Under the pieces are notes generated by a model that saw nothing but the letters and a program-made list of their open reading frames with translations, ran no database searches and was not told the DNA's origin. The translations under genes and the position numbers were made by a program. A DNA stretch of 64,000 nucleotides, taken from positions 124,001 through 188,000 of the IMG/VR virus record IMGVR_UViG_3300020578_000006, one strand, 5' to 3'. Below, piece by piece: positions 2,928 to 49,664 of this stretch (positions are counted from its first letter, which is position 1; every line of letters starts with the position of its first letter).

Positions 2928-2935
2928 TATAAATA
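2928..2935 (+). promoter_or_regulatory. Late promoter TATAAATA
   Basis: 4 nt before ATG 2940. Confidence 0.8.
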
Positions 2936-2939
2936 TAGA

Positions 2940-3440
2940 ATGGAAGATAATGAATTTAGCGTTAATGACCTTATTAAAGAGCTTAATATAAACACTAAGG
3001 AGAATAAGGATAAGCTTAATAATGAAGAGTTTAATTTACCAAAGGACAAACTAGAAGACTTTGTATTGAGTAGTACTGGGAAGCTCGTTACACAAGGGCT
3101 TGATATTGTCGAAGGGGTAAAGGAATATGTTATGAACAACCCGGAAAGCCGAGAAGTTCAAGCATTAGCAGAGGCATTAAAGGCCGTAGCTAGTGCCTTG
3201 TCGGTTGTTAAGGATATTCACATTACACAGGTAAGAAGAGAAAGTGCAAAGGAATTAAAAACCATGGAAATAGAGGCTAGAAAAGAAATTAAACAGGAAG
3301 AAAATACAACCAAACTTTACATTACACGGGATGAGATTTTTAGGAAAATAATGGAAGATGCAAAGACTATAGAAGCAGAAGCCATTAATATCAATACAGC
3401 TACGCCTTCAGCACTCCCTGAGAAGTCAGAGAACTCGTAA
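2940..3440 (+). CDS. Probable terminase small subunit (gp16-like)
   Basis: Helical LVTQGLDIVEGVKEY...SREVQALAEALKAVAS segment resembles the gp16 core (ESEHPRAYEVAGQLIKTVA type); size and late promoter fit. Confidence 0.5.
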   Translation: MEDNEFSVNDLIKELNINTKENKDKLNNEEFNLPKDKLEDFVLSSTGKLVTQGLDIVEGVKEYVMNNPESREVQALAEALKAVASALSVVKDIHITQVRRESAKELKTMEIEARKEIKQEENTTKLYITRDEIFRKIMEDAKTIEAEAININTATPSALPEKSENS

Positions 3441-9972: not shown

Positions 9973-10910
9973 TAAAAGAATCCAGCAGGGTTAAGAACGC
10001 GAGTGGCAGCGTCTTGTAAAGGTGATACTTGGGGAGTATAGCTACCATTAATAATGCCGCTGACGTTGTTAATAATATCGGCAAGAGGAAAATACATACT
10101 GTTTTCTACTGTATAATTTGTGTACGCAAAATTTACATCATAAATTATTGCTTGGTCTGGCTCTCTGTAATCTAAATTTATATTGTTAATAAGTGTAGGT
10201 ACACAATTATAAAACTTATATACTTTTCTAGGTATTTGGCTTATGTTTTGATAGCTTCTCGTATAGCAAAGCAGTGTAATATTACACTTAATATTTCTGT
10301 AATCCTTTTGACCAGGTATATCGTTTGGGTATGCAACCATTCCTAAATGGCTAGCCAAAATAACCCAAGGCCTGAATACATTATCTACAATACTAGTATT
10401 GGTTTCAAGAAATCCTAATCTTAGTGGCGTTTGCGAATATCCTGTTCTATTTTCTGACATAACACCTTGCACAAACCCTCTGCTTTTACCGGTAGTACCA
10501 ATTGTTATGTCTCGAGTTGTAAAGGTTTCCTGGGGTATCATCGCAGTTTGGGCGAACACACACCCAATAACTTTTTGAAATGGAAAACTTGTTAATAATA
10601 TTTTTGCTTGATCAATATCATACCCTCTCTTACCTCCATCTGTTCGTTCCAATCTTTGTAATAGTTGAGAATTTAGCGCTCTCGGAAAAGAGTCAATAAC
10701 TGCGATCCATTGCGATTGTAAAGGTATACTTGTAAGCCAGCTTTGAAGTTGAAGTAGGAAATAATCTCTTGTACTGATTAGCGGTACACCGGGTATATTA
10801 AAACCCAGTAAATTAGTAATTTGAGGTTCAGATAAAGGGTTAGTACCGCGGCCGATACCTAAAACGTTATTAGTAAGACCTTGAAAGGCATTAGTAATAG
10901 GGTTATTCAT
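9972..10910 (-). CDS. Tail-tube-fold baseplate protein (gp54-like tube initiator)
   Basis: LRLGFLETN...FRPW...YKFYNCVP...YDVNFAY gp19/gp54-family pattern; own late promoter. Confidence 0.6.
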   Translation of the reverse strand: MNNPITNAFQGLTNNVLGIGRGTNPLSEPQITNLLGFNIPGVPLISTRDYFLLQLQSWLTSIPLQSQWIAVIDSFPRALNSQLLQRLERTDGGKRGYDIDQAKILLTSFPFQKVIGCVFAQTAMIPQETFTTRDITIGTTGKSRGFVQGVMSENRTGYSQTPLRLGFLETNTSIVDNVFRPWVILASHLGMVAYPNDIPGQKDYRNIKCNITLLCYTRSYQNISQIPRKVYKFYNCVPTLINNINLDYREPDQAIIYDVNFAYTNYTVENSMYFPLADIINNVSGIINGSYTPQVSPLQDAATRVLNPAGFF

Positions 10911-10916
10911 CCCTAT

Positions 10917-10924
10917 TATTTATA
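10917..10924 (-). promoter_or_regulatory. Late promoter TATAAATA
   Basis: 6 nt before ATG 10910. Confidence 0.8.
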
Positions 10925-13991: not shown

Positions 13992-14576
13992 TTATAAAAG
14001 TGTCATCTTTAACTGATGATAAGCAAACTGAAAGCCACATTCCATTTCATTAGGGTCTCTATCATTATAATTAACACCCTCTAGACCTATAGGAAACGAA
14101 CGAATATAGTCAAATTTTACTGTTCTTTTATTGTATTCGTCCAAGCCATATATAGAGATGTCTGTCATATATTCTGGTGTATTAGAGTCTATATTAGGGT
14201 TTTTTGGGTCAAAAATACCTGTTGTGGCATTATTGAATATATCTAGCCATTTGTAAAGCACCCAATAGTTGTTAAATTGATTATCAACTGTAAAGCTTAC
14301 CTTAAGACTTGGAAAATCTGGTCTTGCATAAGAAGTTACCTTGAGTGTTTGTCCAGAATAAGGAAGTAAGACCGGTGGAACCTCTATAGGAGGTGCAACC
14401 GCACCCCATATACTAAACTGTAAAGTATTAAAATTTACTACGGAATTTCTTCTTGCAATCTCTGCAACTTTATCTTTTAAAATTGTAGGAATGGTTAGAA
14501 CCAAAATAAATTTATCCCTACGCTGCTTGTTAAAAGGGCTTTGAAAAATTGGAGTCTGATTTACAGGGGTCGCCAC
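13992..14576 (-). CDS. Tail completion / tube terminator (gp3-like, gp19 fold)
   Basis: KFILVL...PYSGQTLKV...LKVSFTVDNQFNNYWVLYKWL...FPIGLEGVNY; GTG start. Confidence 0.65.
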   Translation of the reverse strand: MATPVNQTPIFQSPFNKQRRDKFILVLTIPTILKDKVAEIARRNSVVNFNTLQFSIWGAVAPPIEVPPVLLPYSGQTLKVTSYARPDFPSLKVSFTVDNQFNNYWVLYKWLDIFNNATTGIFDPKNPNIDSNTPEYMTDISIYGLDEYNKRTVKFDYIRSFPIGLEGVNYNDRDPNEMECGFQFAYHQLKMTLL

Positions 14577-16306
14577 GGATTATTTATACCTTTACTCGGA
14601 TCTCCCGGAAAATACCACCCCTGTTGTCTTAGGTCTTCTATTTCTGCATCTACAATTGGCATCTTGTCATCCATTACAACAGGTAAAATACTATTGTCGT
14701 TATTTTCTAATTTTTCATTTGAGTATACGCTAAACGGACTTATTACGCCTTTAATACCGTAATCTAGGCTCTTAATAACTTGTGGCCTGTCACAAGCGTC
14801 AAGAGATACAACATCAAAATATCTAACACATATTTCATTTTCCAATGCCATTAACGCCCATATTAATGCCATCACTCTATCATCCCAACTATCGGATCCC
14901 GGTCTTGCACCCCACGTATTATTCGGGTATCTAATAAAACTTTTTAATTCTCTCAAGGTATACGTATCACGAAGCTTTACAGCTTTAAGCTCGTTAACCC
15001 AATATCTCATATTCATTACCCCTCTATATTTGGTATTGGTATGAGAGTATATTCCTAACCGTTTTATTTTTTGAATATTATTTTCACCTGCTTTTGACCC
15101 CCACGATACTATATTTTCATATCTGTGAGTAAATTTTAATTGCTCTACTACTTGTGCACCACAACTATTTCTTTCTATTAATACAGGGGGTCTGCCCCAT
15201 TGATTCAAAACTTCCAGTAATTTGGCCGTAAACGAAAAAGGAATTGTATCTCTAGTATGATATATTGCTACCTGCTCTATAGACGTAAGATCTGTAACAT
15301 CCAAAATTTGAATTACACTTGCTGCCTCTCCGACCCCCTCGCTGATATCAACCCCAACTACATATAATCTTTCTTCTTTAGGTTCTTCCCAAACCAAATA
15401 TCTACCCTCATCAAATATAAATTCTGGCTCTCTTATTTCCCGGCTCAAAACCCCGAAAAGAGCTTCATCTACTGAACTTTCCCCTCCATGCAAAAATTCA
15501 TTTCCAAACTCTTGTGCAAACGCCTCCTGGCTTCCTAATGTCTTAATTGTATCGTTTTTCCATTTTTCATCTCTTCCGGGAATTTCCCACCAATCAATTC
15601 TTTCTGATTTCCAGTTATTATCTCCCGATTGTGCTCCAGCATATAGTTGATAAAATAAATTATCCGTTCCATTTGGAGTACTTGCTATAAAAATTTTAGA
15701 TTTTTTTGAACTTGAAATAATTGGATAGACAGATTCCCAGAATTTTTCTACAATATGATTATCGATAAAAGCCAACTCATCAAGAATAAGACAATTACAA
15801 CTATCACCTCTACCTGCATCACTACTTGTTGTACTAATACCAATACTACTACCATTAGTTAGAGTCATACTTGTCTGCCCATATTCTACAACTCCTGGTT
15901 TTAAAAAGTTAGGTAACATTTCATAAGCCATTCTAACTCTTTTAAAGATGTTTTTTGCAGTTTGTTCTTTATTAGCAACAATCAAAATTCTCTGATCGTC
16001 ATTAAAACATGCATTCCATAAACAATAAATGGTCATTAAAGTTGTTTTACCTATCTGTCTAGAAGCAAGTAATATTACAAACCTACCGTCTCTTAAACTT
16101 CTAAGAATTCTCTTTTGACAAGAATATAGCTTAATTTTTTCTTTTCCTCTATCTAGATTAATAATGTAGAAGTAATTTTCTGCAAAATGTAATAAGTTTT
16201 TCTTACATTTTTTTAATTCACTTATCATTTCTGCCGTATACTCATGCTTAGTATTGACGGTTGGTAATCTTTCATTACCTAGATAAAATTTCTCTTTTTT
16301 CTCCAT
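14561..16306 (-). CDS. gp17: Terminase large subunit gp17
   Basis: ASRQIGKT Walker A, LILDELAF Walker B, STPNG, FAQEF, VGVDISEG and DDRVMAL nuclease motifs. Confidence 0.97.
   Translation of the reverse strand: MEKKEKFYLGNERLPTVNTKHEYTAEMISELKKCKKNLLHFAENYFYIINLDRGKEKIKLYSCQKRILRSLRDGRFVILLASRQIGKTTLMTIYCLWNACFNDDQRILIVANKEQTAKNIFKRVRMAYEMLPNFLKPGVVEYGQTSMTLTNGSSIGISTTSSDAGRGDSCNCLILDELAFIDNHIVEKFWESVYPIISSSKKSKIFIASTPNGTDNLFYQLYAGAQSGDNNWKSERIDWWEIPGRDEKWKNDTIKTLGSQEAFAQEFGNEFLHGGESSVDEALFGVLSREIREPEFIFDEGRYLVWEEPKEERLYVVGVDISEGVGEAASVIQILDVTDLTSIEQVAIYHTRDTIPFSFTAKLLEVLNQWGRPPVLIERNSCGAQVVEQLKFTHRYENIVSWGSKAGENNIQKIKRLGIYSHTNTKYRGVMNMRYWVNELKAVKLRDTYTLRELKSFIRYPNNTWGARPGSDSWDDRVMALIWALMALENEICVRYFDVVSLDACDRPQVIKSLDYGIKGVISPFSVYSNEKLENNDNSILPVVMDDKMPIVDAEIEDLRQQGWYFPGDPSKGINNPWRPL
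14581..14588 (-). promoter_or_regulatory. Late promoter TATAAATA
   Basis: 4 nt before GTG 14576. Confidence 0.8.
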
Positions 16307-16312
16307 TTAATA

Positions 16313-16320
16313 TATTTAGA
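16313..16320 (-). promoter_or_regulatory. Variant late promoter TCTAAATA (gp17)
   Basis: 6 nt before ATG 16306; one mismatch. Confidence 0.45.
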
Positions 16321-16322
16321 GG

Positions 16323-16330
16323 TATAAATA
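16323..16330 (+). promoter_or_regulatory. Late promoter TATAAATA
   Basis: 5 nt before ATG 16336. Confidence 0.8.
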
Positions 16331-16335
16331 GATAT

Positions 16336-17280
16336 ATGACAAGAGTAAAAAGTATCAGCGATATTAGTCAGGTATATGAACAAATGTTAGAATCTAAAAA
16401 GGCTGATCAAACAAATACTCAGGAAGTAGTTGAGGAAAAAGCAGTTAAAAAGCTAGAATCATTTCCAAAAGCTACAGATAAAAAGGTTAACGTGGCAAAG
16501 ATTATGGCCAAGGGGTCTGATAAAAATGCTTTTGCACATAAAGATTCTGGGCCAGAGGCTGTATTAGGTGTTAATAAGAAAATTGTCGATCCAAAGACAG
16601 CAAAAAAGAATAATTACTTTGAACCAGAAAAATTTTCAGATAATACTAGAAAATTAGCTAAAGAGAATATAAATAATCATATGAAGTCAATTTTTGATAA
16701 ACTATATGAAGATGTAATTGGTAGCGACAAGCTCGATATCGGCTTACAAGCCGGTCCAGAAGGTGAAGCTACAGATGCTAAGGACCTCGATCTTAGCGGC
16801 GGTAGTGAAGATACCGTTACAGTAAAGCTTGATAGAGATTTAGCTCAAAAATTACATGATGCTCTTATGGATGTTCTTGGTGGTGAAGAAGAGCACGGTG
16901 ATGAAGATCTTGGTGATGAAGCCGCTCCTCTAGAAGATAAGGAAGAGGCTGAAGAAAAGAAGGAAGATAAGAAAGACGAAGCTGAAGAGGCTGAAGAAAA
17001 GAAGGAAGATAAGAAAGAAGTTGCCGGTGAAGGTACTGATCTTAAAGAAGTCTCCCCTAAGGCTGGTCAGTCTCTAGTAGGCCATGGCACAACACATGCT
17101 GGTAAAGTACCTACTGTTGGTAAGATCCGCGCTTCTGGCGGTAAGGCTAGCGGTGATGTAGCTGGTGTAGTTGATGGTAAGGGCAAAACCTTATCTCCCG
17201 CTGGTGGTCATGGCTTGACAAAGCCTGGTAGCATTAATGTAGGTGCTGCTGGTTACAAAGTTGGCGATTTTTTTAAATAA
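16336..17280 (+). CDS. Acidic, putatively abundant head core/internal protein (long form)
   Basis: Start moved from 16261 to ATG 16336; Glu/Lys-rich centre, Gly-rich C-terminus; followed by a terminator. Confidence 0.65.
   Translation: MTRVKSISDISQVYEQMLESKKADQTNTQEVVEEKAVKKLESFPKATDKKVNVAKIMAKGSDKNAFAHKDSGPEAVLGVNKKIVDPKTAKKNNYFEPEKFSDNTRKLAKENINNHMKSIFDKLYEDVIGSDKLDIGLQAGPEGEATDAKDLDLSGGSEDTVTVKLDRDLAQKLHDALMDVLGGEEEHGDEDLGDEAAPLEDKEEAEEKKEDKKDEAEEAEEKKEDKKEVAGEGTDLKEVSPKAGQSLVGHGTTHAGKVPTVGKIRASGGKASGDVAGVVDGKGKTLSPAGGHGLTKPGSINVGAAGYKVGDFFK
16668..16675 (+). promoter_or_regulatory. Internal late promoter TATAAATA
   Basis: Exact box inside the CDS, 5 nt before in-frame ATG 16681. Confidence 0.7.
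16681..17280 (+). CDS. Nested in-frame short form (199 aa, MKSIFDKLYE...)
   Basis: 16681-16336 = 345 nt (in frame); own late box and L-x-E N-terminus. Confidence 0.5.
   Translation: MKSIFDKLYEDVIGSDKLDIGLQAGPEGEATDAKDLDLSGGSEDTVTVKLDRDLAQKLHDALMDVLGGEEEHGDEDLGDEAAPLEDKEEAEEKKEDKKDEAEEAEEKKEDKKEVAGEGTDLKEVSPKAGQSLVGHGTTHAGKVPTVGKIRASGGKASGDVAGVVDGKGKTLSPAGGHGLTKPGSINVGAAGYKVGDFFK
16942..17018 (+). repeat. 35-nt direct repeat, period 42 nt (EEAEEKKEDKK x2)
   Basis: gaagaggctgaagaaaagaaggaagataagaaaga at 16942 and 16984. Confidence 0.85.
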
Positions 17281-17302
17281 TTTAAAAGTAGCTTAAATAG
17301 AG

Positions 17303-17328
17303 AAGCCGTCAGTAATGACGGCTTTTTT
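17303..17328 (+). terminator. Rho-independent terminator
   Basis: Stem AAGCCGTCA / TGACGGCTT, GTAA loop, T tract. Confidence 0.88.
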
Positions 17329-17330
17329 AT

Positions 17331-17338
17331 TATAAATA
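17331..17338 (+). promoter_or_regulatory. Late promoter TATAAATA
   Basis: 5 nt before GTG 17344. Confidence 0.8.
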
Positions 17339-17343
17339 ACATT

Positions 17344-17745
17344 GTGAGTCTCTTCGAAAAAGTATTTGTATCGCTTCTCGAAAAAGAATTAATAAATTCG
17401 GCCGCTACCTGGAATACCGGTATTATGCCAATTCATTATACCCCTCCACCCAAACCATTTCGACCTATGAATCCAGATAAACCAAGAGAAAGACATAGAA
17501 AAATTATTAAAGATCCTAAATTTAGAAAAAATGTTCAAACAGTACCTGACATGCACAAGGCAGATCCTACAGCAATAAGTGCGGTTACTAACGCAAGAGG
17601 TCAAAAATTATCTGAAGACGAATTAAAGCAAATATGTAGTAAGTATGGTATTTCTAGGCTTAACTCTAATTCACCTAAAAGCTTAGGTAATACAGGTAAA
17701 GTTTTAAAGTTTAGTCCAGAAATACAAGGATATGTAATTCAATGA
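17344..17745 (+). CDS. Hypothetical late protein (MSLFEKVFVSLLE)
   Basis: ORF with late promoter; ATGA-coupled to gp14. Confidence 0.6.
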   Translation: MSLFEKVFVSLLEKELINSAATWNTGIMPIHYTPPPKPFRPMNPDKPRERHRKIIKDPKFRKNVQTVPDMHKADPTAISAVTNARGQKLSEDELKQICSKYGISRLNSNSPKSLGNTGKVLKFSPEIQGYVIQ

Positions 17746-18497
17746 GCATGGACAAATATACGGGGGTAAATTGTATTAGAAAATACCCCCTACAATATAC
17801 TACAAGCACGCTCCGATTTACAGATAAAGAAAACAATGAGTGTGAACGTCAATTATACAGCAATTACTGGAGAGAACAAATTGACCTTTACGGGCAAAAA
17901 GTTTTGTATTATAGACATACATACGACACTTTAAGTGCAGATAATATTTACGGGGAAATGCCATTAGCAAAATTCGAAGAGCCAAAATCCTTTATAATGT
18001 CAATAAGGTTAACAGAAAATGCATTAGTATTAAGTAAATTTGGATTTCAAAGTGACGATCAAGTTACAGCATATGTCCATATAAGTTCTTTTTACGCGGT
18101 TTACCCACCCAACATAGAACCTAAAGCTGGTGATGTTTTCAAGTTAGTAGAATATGGGAGTGATAGACCTGGGGAGCGGGACGGTAAAATGTTTGAAATA
18201 ACTGAACGTGTTGATGAAGATAACTCTCAAATAAACCCATTAATGGGCCATTACGTTTGGATGTTAAAGGCTAAGCGCTTTGATTATTCATTTGAGCCTA
18301 ATATTCAATTTGAAAAAGGAAGCAACCAAGTACAAGACACCCCAAAATATGGCACATTAAGCGCAGCTTTTACAACTCTACCTGGTTCTTTTGTTCAAAG
18401 AACAAGCAGTTACCCCGGTGATGCAAACACCACTAGCAAGGATAGAGTCTTTAATATGGATGTAAACGAAACGCTGGAATACGGCGGTTATTATTAA
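17742..18497 (+). CDS. gp14: Neck / head completion protein gp14
   Basis: EQIDLYGQKVLYY, IYGE...KFE, FGFQSDD, PKAGD, FEITE and YVWMLKAKRFDYS neck-protein pattern. Confidence 0.8.
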   Translation: MSMDKYTGVNCIRKYPLQYTTSTLRFTDKENNECERQLYSNYWREQIDLYGQKVLYYRHTYDTLSADNIYGEMPLAKFEEPKSFIMSIRLTENALVLSKFGFQSDDQVTAYVHISSFYAVYPPNIEPKAGDVFKLVEYGSDRPGERDGKMFEITERVDEDNSQINPLMGHYVWMLKAKRFDYSFEPNIQFEKGSNQVQDTPKYGTLSAAFTTLPGSFVQRTSSYPGDANTTSKDRVFNMDVNETLEYGGYY

Positions 18498-21614: not shown

Positions 21615-21796
21615 TTAGTAGAAGGCTTTACATCTTCAATACTAACAACACCTTTACGAATAAAGGTACCGCTAGCCGGATCATACCAGTGAGCCTCTTT
21701 TACAATCTTATCTCCTACAATACGTTCAACTATCTTAGGCTCTACTGGTTGTCCGCTAATAGGGCTAGCAATCTTGCAAGGTCTGACAAAGTCCAT
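21611..21796 (-). CDS. Small hypothetical late protein
   Basis: 61 aa; ATG 6 nt after TATAAATA. Confidence 0.6.
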   Translation of the reverse strand: MDFVRPCKIASPISGQPVEPKIVERIVGDKIVKEAHWYDPASGTFIRKGVVSIEDVKPSTN

Positions 21797-21802
21797 ATAT
21801 TA

Positions 21803-21810
21803 TATTTATA
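21803..21810 (-). promoter_or_regulatory. Late promoter TATAAATA
   Basis: 6 nt before ATG 21796. Confidence 0.8.
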
Positions 21811-23281: not shown

Positions 23282-23644
23282 TTATGTTTGCTTGGGTGCT
23301 TCACATGTATATTTAGGGCGCTCAGCATAATATGGTGTGTTTTTGGCATTGTTGTTAATACCTCTTTCAATAAGATATCTAATAATCACTTCAATACTAT
23401 CGGTTTTAATACAATAATTTTTGTTAATTCGAATACCACCGTCATTTAATTCAAACATTATATCGTTTAAAAAATCCTTATTCTGAAAGCAAGTAATAAA
23501 CAAGCTCGCGCCGCCTGGATCGACCAATACCGTCCATCTTCTTGGGTCGTGTGCACCATATCCATTGAATGTTTTTAAAACAATAAAACCGTTATCCCTA
23601 AGTCTCTTAACGAAATAACCTGGTGTTGTAATTTTGTTTTTCAT
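23282..23644 (-). CDS. Hypothetical protein
   Basis: 120 aa, TAATG-coupled to gp45. Confidence 0.6.
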   Translation of the reverse strand: MKNKITTPGYFVKRLRDNGFIVLKTFNGYGAHDPRRWTVLVDPGGASLFITCFQNKDFLNDIMFELNDGGIRINKNYCIKTDSIEVIIRYLIERGINNNAKNTPYYAERPKYTCEAPKQT

Positions 23645-24372
23645 TATTTTACTAGTGACGAAGCTATGTAACGTGTTTTAACAACTCCGTCTAAAAGTTG
23701 AAACATTATAACTCCTAATTTTGGATTAATTTTACACTCTAACTGCTTTACTCTCACACTACTAATTATTCGGATTAACTCAAAATTCAAGCATAAAGAT
23801 TCTAGCGGACTGCCAGTGTAATCCCCTAAAGGTAAGGAAATATTGTCAACATTATGTCTTGCTTTATCTGTTAAATCGCCATATATTTTACCATCCTGTG
23901 AGTAGATATATAACTTGTTACTTTCAGTTGCAAATGTAGAGCCTCTCAACAGATCAACTAACGACTTGTATTGTATGTTAAATGTTATAGGAAACGATAA
24001 GCTTGCAAGCTTAGAAACGTCGACTTTTGGGGGTATAATAATACCGTCTTCGAGTAGATGGTATTTAAACCTAATTTCTGGCCCTGAATAGCTAATATTA
24101 TTTTTATCAATTGTTAGAGTAAAATTATTATCTTGTACGCATTCTAAAGCCTTAATAACCTTTTTAATATCCGAAATGTTTAATCTTAAGGTTGTTTCGG
24201 TATCAAGCTCGGTATTATATGCAGAGTGCAATATAACGGAAGCGTCGGTTGTACTAACAACACTAGAAAACCCTTCACCGGTAACCGTTATTACGCAACT
24301 ATCATTTATCTTACTAAGAGGGAGTAAGAAGCCATTTAAAAAAAGCTTACGGTCTGGGATATGAACATTCAC
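23644..24372 (-). CDS. gp45: Sliding clamp gp45
   Basis: 242 aa; size, LLPLSKIN, LNISDIKKVIKAL and KYHLLE pattern; replication-module position. Confidence 0.75.
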   Translation of the reverse strand: MNVHIPDRKLFLNGFLLPLSKINDSCVITVTGEGFSSVVSTTDASVILHSAYNTELDTETTLRLNISDIKKVIKALECVQDNNFTLTIDKNNISYSGPEIRFKYHLLEDGIIIPPKVDVSKLASLSFPITFNIQYKSLVDLLRGSTFATESNKLYIYSQDGKIYGDLTDKARHNVDNISLPLGDYTGSPLESLCLNFELIRIISSVRVKQLECKINPKLGVIMFQLLDGVVKTRYIASSLVK

Positions 24373-29362: not shown

Positions 29363-30241
29363 ATGGACTTAGATAGTAAGTTAATTTTTGAGGCATACTC
29401 TCAAGCTAAATCAAAAATCTTGACAGAAGCTCCTATAGAGATGTCTGGTGACATTACAACAGAGCCTATAACTCAAAAAACTATGCCTGGGCAAGGAAAA
29501 GCATATGGAGCTGGTGCAATTGCAAAGATTGCCGTAGCTACAAAAAAGACGGAGGAACAAATTGGAGAAGATATGGCAAACTTTATTAAAGGTCATCCTG
29601 AACTTACAAAAAAATTAATAGACAATAAAGAGCAACTATATTACCCTGGTGACCCACAAACTTTTATTAATGAGCTTGTACAGGGGAGAAAAGATTATCC
29701 ATCATTTACTCAAAAATTCGGAGTTGTTCGCTCTCAAGCAGGCTTTACTATAAACTATGTTTTAAACTATCTTTTAGGTGCAAAAAAGACAAAGGGTGGC
29801 CTGGTTATGGATGCAGCAAGAAAAAAAGAAGTAAAAGCCGCTAAAGCAGCAGCTGCTCCAAAAACAGAAACAGTTTTTGAAATTGATAAAGCTGTCAAAT
29901 TAGAAAACAAAGCATTAAGACCAATTGTAATGAGCCTACCTGATGATGATGTACCAGAAAAAGAAATTTTAGGCGTTCTAAAGACCGCTATCAACGAATA
30001 TAATGATCGTCCTGGTATTGAACCTCTAAAAATTAAATCTTTTGATTTGTTTGATATTTTAAAGACAGCTGGTGTAATTAAAGAAAAACAAGTTGAGAAA
30101 AAAGCTAAAGAAGGTGAAGGTTCGGGAGAAGTAGAGACAATAGACGAATACCCAGAAGGGGACGATGTTCATATGGCGGCTAAAGAGCTGTTTAATATTA
30201 GAAGTACCCCTGGGGACCCCAACTACGGAGATTTTAGTTAA
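29363..30241 (+). CDS. Hypothetical late protein (MDLDSKLIFE...KILTE)
   Basis: 292-aa ORF with late promoter. Confidence 0.6.
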   Translation: MDLDSKLIFEAYSQAKSKILTEAPIEMSGDITTEPITQKTMPGQGKAYGAGAIAKIAVATKKTEEQIGEDMANFIKGHPELTKKLIDNKEQLYYPGDPQTFINELVQGRKDYPSFTQKFGVVRSQAGFTINYVLNYLLGAKKTKGGLVMDAARKKEVKAAKAAAAPKTETVFEIDKAVKLENKALRPIVMSLPDDDVPEKEILGVLKTAINEYNDRPGIEPLKIKSFDLFDILKTAGVIKEKQVEKKAKEGEGSGEVETIDEYPEGDDVHMAAKELFNIRSTPGDPNYGDFS

Positions 30242-30927
30242 GTAAAAAACGGACTGTTAAAATCAAAATTTGCCACTGAAGTTAATCCTTCTGTTGTGAG
30301 TTCATAGATCACACCCTCTTCTAAAGGTTCGCTGTTTTTAAATCTAACACTACTAAACTCATTTTCGAGCATATTTGCAAAAACTGTACTACCACATCTT
30401 GCTAAATTAACTTTCCTTTCATTGGTGTTTGCTATCCATAATCCGAAAGTACCTTCTAGTTGTGATAATGTTGAAACGATAACTTGAAGGGGATCAAACT
30501 CTCCTTCACCCGAGGCCTCTATAGTGTGTAGCATATATGGTATAATGCTCGAGTCTACTGGGTTCGGCCATTTAGGATTATATTCTTTTTTAATACTATC
30601 AAAGTTGGAAAGAACACCATTATGTGCCACTACCCAGTTTTCATATACAAATGGATGTGATGTTTCACGGGAGAATTTACGCTTGCTAGATGTAGGAGCT
30701 TGAGTGTGTCCGAGATAAAAATACGGCTGTATCTTTTGTTTTTTAATACTCTCATCCAACTCTTTGCTAGCGTCTTTCAAAGAAATGGATCCATTCCACC
30801 TATGAACAACTAAATCACTTGTTGTTGTAAAAATAACTAATGAAGTGGAAAAGCTACCCCTTTTTCTATTCAAATCATATAAATCGAGAAACGATTCTTT
30901 TTTTACAGCTCCAAATATACCGCACAT
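30238..30927 (-). CDS. Class II glutamine amidotransferase (Ntn), QueC-associated
   Basis: MCGIFG (catalytic Cys2), LGHT, HPF, VAHNG, VDS; abuts queC. Confidence 0.88.
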   Translation of the reverse strand: MCGIFGAVKKESFLDLYDLNRKRGSFSTSLVIFTTTSDLVVHRWNGSISLKDASKELDESIKKQKIQPYFYLGHTQAPTSSKRKFSRETSHPFVYENWVVAHNGVLSNFDSIKKEYNPKWPNPVDSSIIPYMLHTIEASGEGEFDPLQVIVSTLSQLEGTFGLWIANTNERKVNLARCGSTVFANMLENEFSSVRFKNSEPLEEGVIYELTTEGLTSVANFDFNSPFFT

Positions 30928-31671
30928 TTAATTATTATAGGTATCGTAGCTTATTATTCTACAGTTATATTTTTCCCAAACAGGCTTTAAGTCTTGTCTA
31001 TAGGGTAAGGGGTCAATATAACCTGCATTAGCAAAACCTTTAATTCTTAATGCACTACTCGGTGAATTTGCATCACATAAATTTTCACCAGAATAACAAG
31101 TATATGTTTTGCTAAATTTTACTTTTAGTCTTACGCCCTCCTTTACTATTTCAGCCTTATCCATTTCTATCAACGGTGCCTCTATTTTTATTCTTGTTTC
31201 TCGGTTCAACGCCAACACACCATTAATAGTAGGCAAAAATTCAGGACTTGCATCCCAATACCCGGCCAAACTATCTACTTTAGTTGCACCGTGATATACA
31301 ATACAAGCGCCTACAGCTTCTGCATAGGATGCAGCAATACTTAAAAATATCATATTACGATTAGGTACGTATGATTTTGGCTGAGCTTCTCCCGCTATCT
31401 GTCTTATATCAGGGGTCTCTATGTCATTGTTTGTAAGACTACTTGTGGGTGCAAGTTTCTTAATAAAAGACGTATCAATAGTCTGCCACTCTTTTATCTT
31501 AAGCTTTTCAACATGGTATTCAGCTAATTTTAATTCTCTTTTATGTCTTTGACCATAATCATATGAAAGTCCAAAAACGTTTTCTGATCCAAATTGCTCA
31601 ACAGCTTTGTACAGTATTACTGTACTGTCCATTCCTCCAGATATAGGAACTACAACCTTATTCTTTTTCAC
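30928..31671 (-). CDS. queC: 7-cyano-7-deazaguanine synthase QueC
   Basis: ISGGMDST PP-loop, YGQRH, YVPNRNMIFLSIA, TYTCY. Confidence 0.95.
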   Translation of the reverse strand: MKKNKVVVPISGGMDSTVILYKAVEQFGSENVFGLSYDYGQRHKRELKLAEYHVEKLKIKEWQTIDTSFIKKLAPTSSLTNNDIETPDIRQIAGEAQPKSYVPNRNMIFLSIAASYAEAVGACIVYHGATKVDSLAGYWDASPEFLPTINGVLALNRETRIKIEAPLIEMDKAEIVKEGVRLKVKFSKTYTCYSGENLCDANSPSSALRIKGFANAGYIDPLPYRQDLKPVWEKYNCRIISYDTYNN

Positions 31672-40059: not shown

Positions 40060-40677
40060 TTAAGCGTTACTTTGATTATATACACTATTATCTAAAACTC
40101 CATGGTCTTTTGTAAAGACCCTAATTCCTGTCTCTTCTTCATCTCTATTAATAAGACTATCATAATTACGCTCTCTGAAGTCGGCAATTATTTGATGATG
40201 CTTCTTTTCTTTTTTAATTCTGCTAATAAATGCGTGAAAAGCAATAGTTGTAAAATAACTAAAAGGACTAAAGCCGTGGTCAAGTTTAAACTTTTTATAT
40301 TTTAAAGCCTGATACATTTTGACTATAGCGTCGCCCATCATTTCATCTCTATAGCTATAATTAATAAAATTAGGGGCAAACGATAGCCCGTAAGCAATTC
40401 TTTTTATTGCATCAGCAAGATAATCTGTAAGGTTATTAGATTTATAGTACTTACGAATTTCGTCCTCGAACTGCTTACTATTTACATAGTGCGGCTTCTC
40501 AGAAGGTTTTAGTTTTTTAGTAGTATTTTTAGTAGCGGAAGGCTCTACTTCACCGGTAATAGAGGCTACTACTGTCTTAATTAACTTATCATCAGGTACT
40601 GTATCATCTAGTTCAATCTTTTTAGACTTTGCTAGTTGTTTATCTTTTTTAAGCTTCTGAGGTTTTTTCTTTATCAT
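40060..40677 (-). CDS. gp55: Late transcription sigma factor gp55
   Basis: HYVN...IAYGLSFAPNFINYSYRDEMMGDAI...PFSYFTTIAFHAFISRIKKEKK. Confidence 0.95.
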   Translation of the reverse strand: MIKKKPQKLKKDKQLAKSKKIELDDTVPDDKLIKTVVASITGEVEPSATKNTTKKLKPSEKPHYVNSKQFEDEIRKYYKSNNLTDYLADAIKRIAYGLSFAPNFINYSYRDEMMGDAIVKMYQALKYKKFKLDHGFSPFSYFTTIAFHAFISRIKKEKKHHQIIADFRERNYDSLINRDEEETGIRVFTKDHGVLDNSVYNQSNA

Positions 40678-44562: not shown

Positions 44563-45447
44563 ATGAATAGGGACATTAAGTTATTGTTTGAGGCTTATAA
44601 TAGTATTAAAGAGGCAGAAGATACTAACATAGACACCTTTCATAAAGAATTGGCCAAACAATGGGCTAGTTTATTCTTAGATAAATTACATGAGTATCCT
44701 ATTACCAGTAGATCGGCACACTTAGAAAGATTGCTTGATGGTTCATTAGAAGTTTTTAAGAAGTATATTCTAGATGATATTAAATCTAAAAAACTATCTT
44801 ATTTAAAGGCAGACGCTTTTTCAAAAAGCGAAGATGCTCAAAGCATTGTAAAAAAATTCACAGTAGTAAGTGGAGGTGTAGATAACACCAGTGATGTAGG
44901 TTTTGATTTGAGTGAAGTGGACCACGAGCAAGCCCAGAGCTTGCAAGATGTAGTAGACAGAACAATTGAAGACATGGAGAATGATGAAGATTTTGCAGAT
45001 ACTTTTCCTCAAGAATACAGAGAATTTAAGAACAATATGTTTATTATGTCCACCGATAGTGGTGATTTTGTGGCTGTACTTCCAGGGCATTTAGACGAGA
45101 AGCAAGTATTTGCAAAATTGGCATCAGCTTTCAGTGAAGATAAAAAAGGCCTATCAGATCAAGAATATCACCAAGCCCGTAAATTTGGGCTTGAAAGCGC
45201 AGGAGAAGTGGTCGGTAAAGGCCCTATAAAGATTCAGCTGACTAAAGACCAGACTTTATTATGCACAAGAGATGGACGGGAGCAAGAAGTAAAGTTCGTT
45301 AAAGGTGTTATATTTAATTGTGATGAATGGGTAGGGGATTATTATCATTGTGAATCAAAGAAATATGGTGGTGTTGCCGTATTTCCTCCAGACATTAAGC
45401 TATTAAGCGCCCCAGAGGGCACAATTACTCATCTAACTCCAGAGTAA
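44563..45447 (+). CDS. Hypothetical acidic late protein (MNRDIKLLFE)
   Basis: 294-aa ORF with late promoter. Confidence 0.6.
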   Translation: MNRDIKLLFEAYNSIKEAEDTNIDTFHKELAKQWASLFLDKLHEYPITSRSAHLERLLDGSLEVFKKYILDDIKSKKLSYLKADAFSKSEDAQSIVKKFTVVSGGVDNTSDVGFDLSEVDHEQAQSLQDVVDRTIEDMENDEDFADTFPQEYREFKNNMFIMSTDSGDFVAVLPGHLDEKQVFAKLASAFSEDKKGLSDQEYHQARKFGLESAGEVVGKGPIKIQLTKDQTLLCTRDGREQEVKFVKGVIFNCDEWVGDYYHCESKKYGGVAVFPPDIKLLSAPEGTITHLTPE

Positions 45448-49247: not shown

Positions 49248-49664
49248 ATGCGTAGTTACAAAGAATTTTTCTATGAACAAATACTAGGGGCTACGGAAGG
49301 TATTACTATTCAACATGTTGGAAACGTTAGAGCCACTGTAGACACTGGTAACAGCGGTTATAATGTACTTCATGCAGAAATAATTGATGGTGCAAAAGAG
49401 GGACATGTAAAATTTAAAACAGTAAACGACAAAGTGTTAGAATTGCCTGTAAAAGAGTTTATAACGGTATCCGGAAATAATAATACCAACGATAGACCAG
49501 TAGTAGAGTTAGACTGTAGCTTGGGCCAAGAACAATTTAATAAAGTTCCTTTCAGCCTTGCGGACAGAAGTCAGCAAGATACCCCTGTTCTCTTAAGTAA
49601 AGATTTTATAAAATTAAATGGCGGTGTTGTTAATGTTAATATTAACAGCGAAATTAAAAAATAA
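49248..49664 (+). CDS. Retropepsin-like aspartic protease (RimB/'ATP-dependent Zn protease' family-like)
   Basis: ATVDTG catalytic motif, RPVVEL, FSLADRS...PVLL; N-terminus MRSYKEFFYE. Confidence 0.75.
   Translation: MRSYKEFFYEQILGATEGITIQHVGNVRATVDTGNSGYNVLHAEIIDGAKEGHVKFKTVNDKVLELPVKEFITVSGNNNTNDRPVVELDCSLGQEQFNKVPFSLADRSQQDTPVLLSKDFIKLNGGVVNVNINSEIKK

What the first reader, a model, noticed from the sequence alone, without database searches (positions are those of the whole stretch)
16323..17328. Nested in-frame late gene producing two isoforms of an acidic core protein
The gene has a perfect TATAAATA 5 nt before ATG 16336. A second perfect TATAAATA lies inside the coding sequence, 5 nt before in-frame ATG 16681. 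Both starts give (hydrophobic)-x-E N-termini (ISQVYE; DKLYE). The shared C-terminal part has a duplicated EEAEEKKEDKK repeat and a Gly-rich tail, and is followed by the only strong terminator seen in the window. This suggests 314-aa and 199-aa isoforms of an abundant scaffold or internal protein, set by dual promoters.
Basis: partly seen in the sequence, partly recalled or inferred. Interest (0 to 1): 0.65.

Follow-up and report, generated by a model that had tools for sequence, protein, structure and literature searches.

The report
Nested late gene with internal promoter
An uncultured T4-like giant phage carries a head-protein-like gene with a second, deeply conserved promoter-plus-start signal inside its coding sequence, so it probably makes a long and a short protein; this works because the phage's late genes appear to start translation right at the 5' end of their mRNAs.

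Summary
TATAAATA lies at 16323-16330 and 16668-16675, each exactly 5 nt before an in-frame ATG (16336, 16681) of one ORF (314 and 199 aa). The strongest terminator in the window follows.

The genome is a complete 229.7-kb uncultured T4-like phage with a gp55-like late sigma, clamp, gp21 protease and gp23 capsid protein. Of its 102 ATAAATA heptamers, 45 lie 4-6 nt before the first start codon of a long ORF. In T4 and cyanophage controls the spacing is 24-46 nt. Late mRNAs are therefore predicted to be leaderless, and box + 5 nt + ATG is a complete expression signal.

The internal signal is kept in 69 of 70 distinct homologues (31-100% identity). Ile is always ATA, Asn always AAT and the spacer always 5 nt. 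Neighbouring conserved codons show about 7 independent synonymous changes each.

The short form begins M-KSIFDKLYE, a leader ending L-x-E like T4 capsid-targeting sequences. At least eight other late genes here have similar leaders.

Best reading: two nested late isoforms of a disordered basic-acidic-basic head-internal protein, trimmed by the prohead protease. No RNA or protein data could be obtained. The family is unannotated and has no cultured representative.

The parts
16323..16330 (+). Late-promoter box P1 (TATAAATA), 5 nt before ATG 16336
   Evidence: The same format occurs at 45 gene starts genome-wide. Homologues carry N-ATAAATA or TTAAATA 4-7 nt before their first ATG/GTG.
16336..17280 (+). 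Long ORF, 314 aa (P0001), stop included
   Evidence: More than 134 metagenomic homologues of about 300 aa; 293 loci in IMG/VR. No Pfam, PHROG or NCBIfam family.
16336..16380 (+). N-terminal leader M1-E15 (M..KSISDISQVYE), a predicted helix and putative propeptide ending V-Y-E
   Evidence: Y14 is at least 90% conserved; E15 is less conserved.
16668..16675 (+). Internal late-promoter box P2 (TATAAATA), encoded as codons N111-I112-N113-N114
   Evidence: ATAAATA is invariant in 69 of 70 distinct homologues. Ile is ATA in 67/67 and Asn is AAT in 67/67. The base at -13 is T 35, A 26, G 3, C 3. There are zero synonymous changes on the tree, against a mean of 7.4 at comparable codons.
16681..17280 (+). 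Nested short ORF, 199 aa, same frame and same C-terminus
   Evidence: M116 is at least 90% conserved. The ATG is always exactly 5 nt after the box, and indels occur only after the Met.
16681..16710 (+). Leader of the short form, MKSIFDKLYE: 10 residues ending L-Y-E, the most conserved block of the protein and a predicted helix
   Evidence: I119, F120, D121, K122, L123, E125 and V127 are invariant. The M-to-E distance is 10-13 residues and L-[YF]-E-[DE] is invariant. T4 IPII/IPIII begin MKTYQEFIAE.
16942..17016 (+). Duplicated EEAEEKKEDKK (period 42 nt) inside the acidic low-complexity middle region
   Evidence: Variable among homologues.
17303..17328 (+). Intrinsic terminator: 9-bp GC-rich stem, GTAA loop, T-run
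   Evidence: dG -22 kcal/mol with A/U extension; strongest in the window. A hairpin plus T-run is conserved in 59 of 60 homologues, with different stem sequences.
17331..17338 (+). Box of the next gene (TATAAATA, 5 nt before GTG 17344), which shows that the target gene is its own transcription unit
   Evidence: A next-gene box directly after the terminator is conserved in homologues.
16313..16319 (-). Variant box CTAAATA, 6 nt before the divergent large-terminase ATG (16306)
   Evidence: CTAAATA precedes a start at 4-6 nt in 16 of 62 occurrences genome-wide. The terminase is identified.
40060..40677 (-). gp55-like late sigma factor (trans-acting)
   Evidence: E 8e-8 to T4 gp55; phrog_234, E 2e-24.
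23644..24372 (-). gp45-like sliding clamp (trans-acting co-activator in T4)
   Evidence: phrog_223, E 8e-12. Not found with T4 or S-RIM8 gp45 or with PF02916.

Best explanation
The gene is a self-contained late transcription unit with two promoters of the T4 late type ([A/T]ATAAATA).

1. Transcription (inferred). Late in infection, host RNA polymerase carrying the phage's gp55-like sigma starts about 6 nt after each box, on the A of the ATG. This gives two 3'-coterminal leaderless mRNAs that end at the hairpin at 17303-17328. The long one (from 16336) encodes 314 aa. The short one (from 16681) encodes the C-terminal 199 aa.
2. Isoform ratio (inferred). The internal AUG has no Shine-Dalgarno sequence and is not at a 5' end in the long mRNA. 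The short protein should therefore come only from the internal promoter, and the ratio of the two forms is set by transcription.
3. The products (charge layout and disorder are computed/predicted from the sequence; targeting and cleavage are inferred). Both are largely disordered. The long form has a basic N-domain (1-115), a very acidic middle (116-235) and a basic Gly-rich tail (236-314). The short form lacks only the basic N-domain. Each form begins with a short helix ending in [V/L]-Y-E, like T4 capsid-targeting propeptides. I infer that both are taken into the prohead core and trimmed by the gp21-like protease after E15 and E125.

The motifs, the conservation and the genome-wide promoter grammar are shown directly. 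The transcription starts, the translation of the short form, head targeting and cleavage are all inferred.
For: (1) Genome grammar. Of 102 ATAAATA, 45 are followed at 4-6 nt by a start codon opening at least 60 codons, nearly always the first possible start of the ORF. 16681 is the only deeply nested case. The reverse-complement control gives 0/102 and ATAAACA gives 0/87. There is no upstream promoter element, as in T4 late promoters.

(2) Published positions. The T4 late box spans -13 to -6 and -13 is often A or T in T4-like phages (PMC1524935). NATAAATA is reported for cyanophages (PMC2984593). With a 5-nt spacer, +1 is the A of ATG.

(3) Controls. The box-to-start spacing peaks at 24-28 nt in T4 and 27-46 nt in S-RIM8, against 4-6 nt here and in 77 related loci.

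(4) Trans-acting factors. A gp55-like sigma and a clamp are present.

(5) Conservation of the internal signal. It is kept in 69/70 distinct homologues with a fixed 5-nt spacer. Only 4 of 46 conserved degenerate codons have no codon variation, and two of these are the box codons. The tree-aware count is 0 changes at the box codons against a mean of 7.4.

(6) SD use. A strict SD occurs in 1 of 34 box genes.

(7) Terminator. It is conserved with covarying stems, and the next gene has its own box.

(8) Head targeting. A T4-type prohead protease is present. gp21 cuts after L/I-x-E and CTSs are 10-19-residue N-terminal propeptides (PMC9026906). T4 IPII/IPIII begin MKTYQEFIAE. Eight other box-driven genes here begin with 10-residue leaders ending [LIF]-x-E.

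(9) Structure. The model is disordered, with helices exactly at 2-26 and 119-129.
Against:
- Two other codons upstream (K99 and K106, both AAA) are also invariant without explanation. Site-to-site rate heterogeneity therefore exists, and the Poisson figure (3.5e-7) is optimistic. An empirical estimate for both box codons falling among the four invariant columns is about 0.006.
- One low-coverage contig (L093) has the box mutated to ATAAACA together with a premature stop in the N-domain.
- Thirteen box-driven genes start with GTG. Leaderless GUG initiation is poor in E. coli (my knowledge), so the true 5' ends or the host's initiation rules may differ.
- The protein has no detectable homology to T4 internal or core proteins. 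It lies next to terminase and neck genes rather than in the gp20-gp23 block.
- P1' after the putative sites is D/E or Q, not the Ala usual in T4.
- V-Y-E at the first site departs from L/I-x-E, and E15 is not invariant.
Confidence: 0.72

Rival explanations
1. The internal promoter and short isoform are real, but the protein is not a head-internal or core component. It might instead act in DNA packaging or neck assembly (its neighbours are the large terminase and a gp14-like neck protein), or be an acidic DNA-mimic or anti-defence protein. The [VL]-Y-E leaders would then be ordinary helices rather than targeting or cleavage signals.
For: - The synteny TerL(-) | target | 133-aa ORF | Hc2 neck protein is conserved.
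- There is no homology to T4 gp22 or IPIII.
- A separate gp22-like scaffold gene exists.
- The middle region is extremely acidic (net -27).
- L/I-x-E is a very short motif.
Against: - L-[YF]-E is invariant and sits 10-13 residues after the internal Met in all homologues.
- The same leader format recurs on at least eight other late genes, some near-identical in pattern to T4's MKTYQEFIAE.
- A T4-type protease is present.
- Disorder plus charge blocks are typical of core and internal proteins (my knowledge).
Confidence: 0.2
2. Only the 314-aa protein is made. The internal ATAAATA-N5-ATG is conserved for another DNA- or RNA-level reason, such as a transcription pause or entry site, a packaging or recombination signal next to the terminase gene, or a promoter that merely boosts 3' RNA. 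M116 is conserved for protein reasons, and the two segments are simply two protease sites in one polypeptide.
For: - No expression data exist.
- T4 core proteins are cut at several internal L/I-x-E sites (PMC5694885).
- K99 and K106 also show unexplained codon invariance.
- The gene abuts the terminase gene.
Against: - The conserved string is identical in sequence, spacing and frame logic to the signal that precedes 45 real gene starts.
- Indels are tolerated immediately after the Met but never between box and Met.
- A transcript starting there would begin with AUG in frame, so translation would be hard to avoid if the other late mRNAs are translated that way.
Confidence: 0.06
3. The internal box is a by-product of a conserved N-I-N-N peptide in an AT-rich genome with biased codon use, and has no nucleotide-level function.
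For: I112 and N113 are invariant residues. AAT is the majority Asn codon (0.69) and ATA is common (0.33-0.39).
Against: - ATA in 67/67 against a background of about 0.35. The other invariant Ile (I119) is ATT 49 / ATA 5.
- Conserved two-fold codons changed 3-16 times on the same tree while the box codons changed 0 times.
- The residue before the box varies (N, S, G, D, T, R, K), and -13 is A or T in 61 of 67 sequences, as in the promoter consensus.
Confidence: 0.02

Closest known systems
T4 gene 17 (large terminase) nested products, plus T4 gene 21/21s and gene 26/26'
   Same: These are in-frame nested late products sharing a C-terminus. The T4 record annotates gene 17 forms as 'internal transcription and in-frame translation', and gene 21 as having an internal start that yields a smaller protein. 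The short gp21 is described as essential for T4 head assembly (PMC9026906).
   Different: The proteins are unrelated. T4 late mRNAs have leaders of roughly 24-28 nt in my control, so in T4 an internal start needs its own ribosome-binding site. Here promoter and start are one 16-nt element written into the codons N-I-N-N-x-M.
Herpesvirus UL26 / UL26.5 (protease-scaffold and scaffold) and phage lambda C / Nu3
   Same: These are head-assembly genes in which a shorter, 3'-coterminal, in-frame product is made in addition to the long one. In HSV the short form comes from a promoter inside the long ORF (my knowledge, not checked here). The arrangement sets the stoichiometry of two forms that share a C-terminal assembly domain.
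   Different: The N-terminal extension here (115 aa, basic) shows no protease signature. There is no homology. Lambda's Nu3 is made by internal translation initiation rather than from a separate promoter (my knowledge).
T4 internal proteins IPI/IPII/IPIII and their capsid-targeting sequence
   Same: Both have a short N-terminal propeptide of 10-19 residues ending in L/I-x-E that is removed by gp21 (PMC9026906). T4 IPII/IPIII begin MKTYQEFIAE. The short form here begins MKSIFDKLYE, and other late genes begin MKSFKEFILE, MVSYRQFIKE and MDLDSKLIFE.
   Different: There is no sequence homology beyond the leader format. T4 IPs are small, basic and hypervariable, whereas this family is acidic, about 300 aa and conserved across a large clade. 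Targeting and cleavage are untested.
T4-type late promoters (gp55/gp33/gp45-dependent; TATAAATA or NATAAATA)
   Same: Both have the same box, the same tolerance at -13 and no upstream element, and both precede structural genes. gp55-like and clamp genes are present.
   Different: The box lies 4-6 nt from the start codon rather than tens of nt away, which predicts leaderless mRNAs. CTAAATA and TTAAATA variants are also used.

Membership tests
T4-type late promoter | Consensus TATAAATA (N-ATAAATA in relatives) as the only sequence element, with no -35 or upstream element | tested here: met
   Both boxes are perfect. A profile of 44 box promoters shows information only in [A/T]ATAAATA[A/T]. Consensus and -13 variability are from PMC1524935 and PMC2984593.
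T4-type late promoter | Phage-encoded gp55 sigma factor | tested here: met
   Window 40060-40677(-): E 8e-8 to T4 gp55; phrog_234 late sigma, E 2e-24.
T4-type late promoter | Sliding clamp gp45 and co-activator gp33 | tested here: inconclusive
   A clamp-like ORF at 23644-24372(-) matches phrog_223 but is not found with T4 or S-RIM8 gp45 or with PF02916. gp33 was not searched.
T4-type late promoter | Transcription starts about 6 nt downstream of the box, late in infection | not testable with these tools
Leaderless mRNA | The mRNA 5' end coincides with the start codon, or lies within 1-2 nt of it | not testable with these tools
   Inferred only, from the box position (-13 to -6 in T4, PMC1524935) and the 4-6 nt spacing.
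Leaderless mRNA | No Shine-Dalgarno sequence, and an AUG start | tested here: inconclusive
   There is no room for an SD, and a strict SD occurs in 1 of 34 box genes. However, 13 of 45 box-driven starts are GTG/TTG.
Nested in-frame gene pair with an internal promoter (T4 gene 17 type, HSV UL26/UL26.5 type) | A second start codon in the same frame giving a C-terminally identical shorter product | tested here: met
   ATG 16681 is in frame and gives 199 aa. M116 is at least 90% conserved.
Nested in-frame gene pair with an internal promoter (T4 gene 17 type, HSV UL26/UL26.5 type) | An independent promoter inside the long ORF | tested here: met
   Met at sequence level only. The box is identical to the genome's gene-start boxes and is conserved at synonymous sites in 69/70 homologues.
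Nested in-frame gene pair with an internal promoter (T4 gene 17 type, HSV UL26/UL26.5 type) | Both proteins are actually produced | not testable with these tools
   No proteomic or RNA data.
T4 CTS-bearing internal/core head protein | An N-terminal propeptide of 10-19 residues ending in L/I-x-E | tested here: met
   Short form: L-Y-E at residues 8-10, invariant in the family. Long form: V-Y-E at 13-15, which departs from L/I and is less conserved. The rule is from PMC9026906.
T4 CTS-bearing internal/core head protein | A gp21-type prohead protease in the same genome | tested here: met
   PF03420, E 5.5e-36, at G000 100315-100989(-).
T4 CTS-bearing internal/core head protein | Sequence homology to T4 IPs, gp22, gp67 or gp68 | tested here: not met
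   hhalign probability is below 1% against gp22 and IPIII. No PHROG or Pfam hit. gp67 and gp68 were not compared.
T4 CTS-bearing internal/core head protein | Present in proheads or virions and cleaved there | not testable with these tools
   The phage is uncultured and no proteome exists.
gp22 prohead scaffold | Homology to gp22, and position between gp21 and gp23 | tested here: not met
   A different 290-aa ORF occupies that position (G000 99242-100114). hhalign finds no relation.
gp13 neck adaptor (considered because of position and size) | Homology to gp13/Ad2 | tested here: not met
   hhalign probability is below 1%. An Ad2-like match lies elsewhere (G000 101523-101795).

The most novel reading that the evidence does not exclude
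A whole, widespread, uncultured (largely lake-metagenome, judging from my recollection of the sample identifiers) clade of T4-like jumbo phages has fused its late promoter to the start codon. The box at -13 to -6 is followed by 4-6 nt and then ATG or GTG, so essentially all late proteins would be translated from leaderless mRNAs, some from a 5'-terminal GUG. That would make a 16-nt string a portable promoter-plus-start cassette that can be written into a coding sequence, here as N-I-N-N-x-M, to create nested isoforms. It would also imply that late in infection translation in the unknown host is geared to leaderless mRNAs, either natively or through a phage factor.
Probability: 0.55. Interest if true: 0.75.

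Novelty: new variant of a known kind. Interest (0 to 1): 0.62.

Why it matters
Nested in-frame isoforms of head-assembly genes are a recurring way for phages and herpesviruses to fix the stoichiometry of assembly proteins. This case adds an unannotated protein family found in hundreds of metagenomic phage contigs, and shows the internal signal to be under purifying selection at synonymous sites.

The wider point is the genome-wide grammar behind it. In this clade the T4 late box sits 4-6 nt from the start codon, unlike in T4 and a T4-like cyanophage. That predicts leaderless late mRNAs, including GUG starts.

If confirmed, this would:
- improve start-codon and promoter annotation for these phages;
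- say something about the translation biology of their unknown host;
- give a minimal late expression cassette;
- provide a catalogue of probable capsid-targeted proteins through their leaders ending in (L/I/F)-x-E.

Tried and rejected
- **RNA evidence.** I did not try another route.
- **Naming the protein.** PHROGs, Pfam and NCBIfam gave nothing. tblastn of P0001, P0065 and P0089 against 50,697 phage records gave nothing. Megablast of the locus gave nothing. The PDB profile search gave nothing meaningful. The Atlas returned only hypothetical viral clusters. Cluster names were 'hypothetical protein' apart from one automatic 'CobT' label, which I disregard.
- **Fold.** The AlphaFold2 model is disordered (pLDDT 54, pTM 0.17), so I did not run fold search.
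- **Rejected identities.** gp22 scaffold, IPIII and the gp13/Ad2 neck adaptor were all rejected.
- **Natural gene fission.** I looked for lineages where the short form is a separate gene. The three database proteins that start at the internal Met turn out to be a contig-edge truncation (L094), a premature stop plus a mutated box in a 5x-coverage contig (L093), and a 1-nt frameshift seen in two records that are probably the same data (L095/L096). I do not count these as evidence either way.
- **Upstream promoter element.** I looked for one that could explain the invariant AAA codons K99 and K106 and found none.
- **Big representative-protein search.** Not used, because the library has no annotation and would not have named the family.
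- **Complex prediction.** Not used. A peptide-protease or peptide-scaffold prediction would not have changed my odds much.
Full report
**What is there.** The + strand has TATAAATA at 16323-16330, then 5 nt, then ATG 16336. This opens a 314-codon frame that ends at 17280. A second perfect TATAAATA lies at 16668-16675, again 5 nt before an ATG (16681) in the same frame, which gives a nested 199-aa product. The two N-termini read M..KSISDISQVYE and MKSIFDKLYE. EEAEEKKEDKK occurs twice (16942-16974 and 16984-17016). The last 79 residues are 23% Gly. A 9-bp GC-rich hairpin with a T-run (17303-17328, dG about -22 kcal/mol with its A/U extension) follows. It is the strongest intrinsic terminator candidate in the 64-kb window. 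The next gene has its own TATAAATA (17331-17338), 5 nt before GTG 17344.

**Chance.** TATAAATA is not enriched in the window (13 found, about 15 expected). One in-frame internal box+ATG in one genome is not significant by itself. The case rests on position and conservation.

**Genome context.** The window is bases 124001-188000 of a single 229,717-bp viral contig (GC 0.35, CheckV 100% complete). It is a T4-like myovirus with these genes:
- large terminase (14561-16306, - strand, divergent from the target), tail sheath and tail tubes;
- a gp14-like neck protein (17742-18497) and primase;
- gp43 polymerase, gp41-like helicase, gp46/47, UvsX, gp32 and a clamp;
- gp23 major capsid protein, gp21 prohead protease and gp20 portal elsewhere in the genome;
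- a gp22-like 290-aa ORF between gp21 and gp23;
- a gp55-like late sigma factor at window 40060-40677.

The terminase is only about 32% identical to that of any deposited phage, the best hits being T4-like cyanophages. This is a deep, uncultured lineage.

**Promoter grammar of the genome.**
- Of 102 ATAAATA heptamers on both strands, 45 are followed at exactly 4-6 nt by ATG, GTG or TTG opening at least 60 codons. Other spacings give 0-3 each.
- In nearly all cases that start is the first possible one in its ORF. ATG 16681, with 141 open codons upstream, is the only deeply nested case.
- Controls: the reverse complement gives 0/102 and ATAAACA gives 0/87. The variants CTAAATA (16/62) and TTAAATA (9/151) are also used, for example CTAAATA 6 nt before the terminase ATG at 16306.
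- A profile of 44 such promoters shows information only in [A/T]ATAAATA[A/T], with no upstream element. That matches T4 late promoters.

The literature places the T4 box at -13 to -6 and notes that -13 is often A or T in relatives (PMC1524935). NATAAATA is reported for cyanomyoviruses (PMC2984593). With a 5-nt spacer the predicted +1 is the A of the ATG, so these late mRNAs should be leaderless or have leaders of 1-2 nt.

The same analysis gives spacing peaks of 24-28 nt in the T4 late region and 27-46 nt in cyanophage S-RIM8. In 77 loci related to this phage the peak is at 4-6 nt. Shine-Dalgarno use is weak in the whole genome: a strict SD occurs in 1 of 34 box genes and 26 of 192 others, against a 3.4% background.

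**Conservation of the internal signal.** The protein has more than 134 metagenomic homologues of about 300 aa, and 293 IMG/VR loci encode relatives. None is annotated.
- The most conserved block of the family is E-N-I-N-N-x-M-(x)-K-S-I-F-D-K-L-Y-E-D-V.
- The internal box is the codon string aaT-ATA-AAT-Aat (N111-I112-N113-N114).
- In 67 unique ORFs (33-100% identity) the Ile is ATA in 67/67, against an in-gene background of 0.33-0.39. The Asn is AAT in 67/67, against a background of 0.69.
- The base at -13 is T 35, A 26, G 3, C 3. The ATG is always exactly 5 nt after the box.
- Insertions occur only after the Met (M-KS, MS-KS, MNN-KS, MKD-KS).
- Two still more divergent members (31-35% identity) keep the same string.
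- Neighbouring invariant residues vary freely at synonymous sites: I119 is ATT 49 / ATA 5, D121 is GAT 39 / GAC 18, and L123 uses six codons. Only 4 of 46 conserved degenerate codons show no codon variation: I112, N113, K99 and K106.
- On a maximum-likelihood tree, conserved two-fold codons underwent a mean of 7.4 independent synonymous changes (range 0-16). The two box codons underwent none.
- K99 and K106 (AAA) are unexplained. They show that site heterogeneity exists, so I treat the Poisson value (3.5e-7) as optimistic. An empirical estimate for both box codons being among the four invariant columns is about 0.006.

The one exception is a 5x-coverage contig (L093). There the box reads ATAAACA and the N-domain carries a premature TAA.

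**The transcription unit.** Most homologues also carry N-ATAAATA or TTAAATA 4-7 nt before their first ATG or GTG. In 59 of 60 homologues a GC-rich hairpin with a T-run follows the stop codon and is itself followed by the next gene's box. The stems differ in sequence between sub-clades while the pairing is kept. The gene is thus a conserved, monocistronic, two-promoter late unit.

**The protein.** AlphaFold2 with the family alignment gives a disordered model (pLDDT 54, pTM 0.17). Confident helices lie only at 2-26, 119-129 and 167-181, and the first two are the two leaders. The charge layout has three parts:
- residues 1-115 are basic (pI 9.4);
- residues 116-235 have net charge -27;
- residues 236-314 are basic and Gly-rich (pI 10.1).

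The short form lacks only the basic N-domain. No homology was found to T4 gp22, IPIII or gp13, to the cyanophage Ad2, or to any PDB chain. A gp13-like gene lies elsewhere.

**Why a head-internal role is the best guess.**
- The genome has a T4-type prohead protease.
- T4 gp21 cuts after L/I-x-E, and T4 internal proteins carry 10-19-residue N-terminal capsid-targeting propeptides whose residues 8 and 10 are needed for processing (PMC9026906).
- T4 IPII and IPIII begin MKTYQEFIAE.
- The short form begins MKSIFDKLYE, and L-[YF]-E-[DE] is invariant 10-13 residues after the internal Met.
- At least eight other box-driven genes of this genome begin with 10-residue leaders ending [LIF]-x-E: MDNDSRLIFE, MRNDIGLIFE, MDLDSKLIFE, MNRDIKLLFE, MNADSHLIFE, MVSYRQFIKE, MKSFKEFILE and MRSYKEFFYE.
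- The long form's leader (V-Y-E at 13-15) resembles the internal one (KSI-x-D...[VL]YE) but is less conserved.

Targeting and cleavage remain inference. The gene's position next to terminase and neck genes leaves room for another role.

**Mechanism proposed.** gp55-directed transcription starts at both boxes and ends at the shared terminator. The two leaderless mRNAs give the 314-aa and 199-aa proteins. The internal AUG is not expected to be used on the long mRNA, because it has no SD and is not at a 5' end, so the isoform ratio is set by promoter strength. If both [VL]-Y-E sites are cut, the long form yields a basic fragment (16-125) plus the acidic-basic fragment (126-314), and the short form yields only the latter. 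The internal promoter would then raise the dose of the C-terminal fragment relative to the N-domain.

**Comparison with known systems.** Nested in-frame late products are known in T4 itself: gene 17 'internal transcription and in-frame translation', gene 21/21s and gene 26/26' (PMC9026906). From my own knowledge they are also known in herpesvirus UL26/UL26.5 and lambda C/Nu3. Two things differ here. Promoter and start codon form one 16-nt element inside the codons N-I-N-N-x-M. And this follows from a clade-wide leaderless late-gene grammar, for which I found no description in the searchable literature. I therefore rate it a new variant of a known kind.

**Limits.** The host is unknown. GTG starts directly after boxes (13 genes) are unusual for leaderless translation as known from E. 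coli. gp33 was not searched, and the clamp is supported only by a PHROG match.

Noticed in passing
whole genome G000; in the window e.g. 2928-2942(+), 10910-10924(-), 14576-14588(-), 17331-17346(+), 20100/20140 divergent pair, 21796-21810(-), 44563(+), 45496(+): The late box ([A/T]ATAAATA, with CTAAATA and TTAAATA variants) sits 4-6 nt before the first start codon of about 45-70 genes. This predicts leaderless late mRNAs. T4 and cyanophage S-RIM8 controls show spacings of 24-46 nt, while 77 related metagenomic loci share the 4-6 nt grammar.
   Followed up: yes
window 29363-30241(+), 44563-45447(+), 49248-49664(+); genome 15636(+), 17426(-), 18284(-), 214671(-), 215683(+): A set of box-driven genes have products that begin with a 10-residue leader ending [LIF]-x-E (MDLDSKLIFE, MNRDIKLLFE, MRSYKEFFYE, MVSYRQFIKE, MKSFKEFILE and others). 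These resemble the T4 IPII/IPIII capsid-targeting sequence MKTYQEFIAE and are candidate capsid-packaged proteins. The two tested against PHROGs had no hit.
   Followed up: partly
window 14576(-), 17344(+), 20100(-), 45496(+), 54769(+) and 8 more in the genome: Thirteen box-driven genes start with GTG (or TTG) only 4-5 nt after the box. They would be leaderless GUG-initiated mRNAs, which is unusual by E. coli rules and may hint at the host's initiation biology.
   Followed up: no
window 16630-16653 (codons K99 and K106 of the target gene): Two Lys codons upstream of the internal box are AAA in all 56-57 unique homologues, with zero changes on the tree. Other conserved Lys codons vary. The promoter profile does not explain this, since it shows no upstream element.
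   Followed up: partly
L093:651-1610; L095 and L096:1-785: Metagenomic variants in which the N-terminal domain is interrupted while the short ORF stays open. L093 has a premature TAA at about codon 96, with the box changed to ATAAACA. L095/L096 have a 1-nt frameshift with the box intact. All are low-coverage or duplicate data, so they may be errors or defective variants.
   Followed up: partly
window 16307-16335: Only 29 nt separate the divergent terminase ATG (16306, - strand) from the target ATG (16336). The interval holds two back-to-back boxes: CTAAATA at 16313-16319(-) and TATAAATA at 16323-16330(+).
   Followed up: partly
window 30238-31671(-): A QueC-like queuosine-biosynthesis gene sits next to a glutamine amidotransferase-like gene. 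This suggests a 7-deazaguanine DNA or nucleotide modification pathway in this phage.
   Followed up: no
whole genome: Shine-Dalgarno use is weak overall (a strict SD before 13.5% of non-box genes, against a 3.4% background), and the regions before starts are A-rich. This is consistent with a host that depends little on SD pairing.
   Followed up: partly
L029-L066 and others, downstream of the homologous gene: In several sub-clades the gene after the terminator carries gcTTAAATA rather than ATAAATA. The internal box of the target gene is nevertheless always ATAAATA.
   Followed up: no
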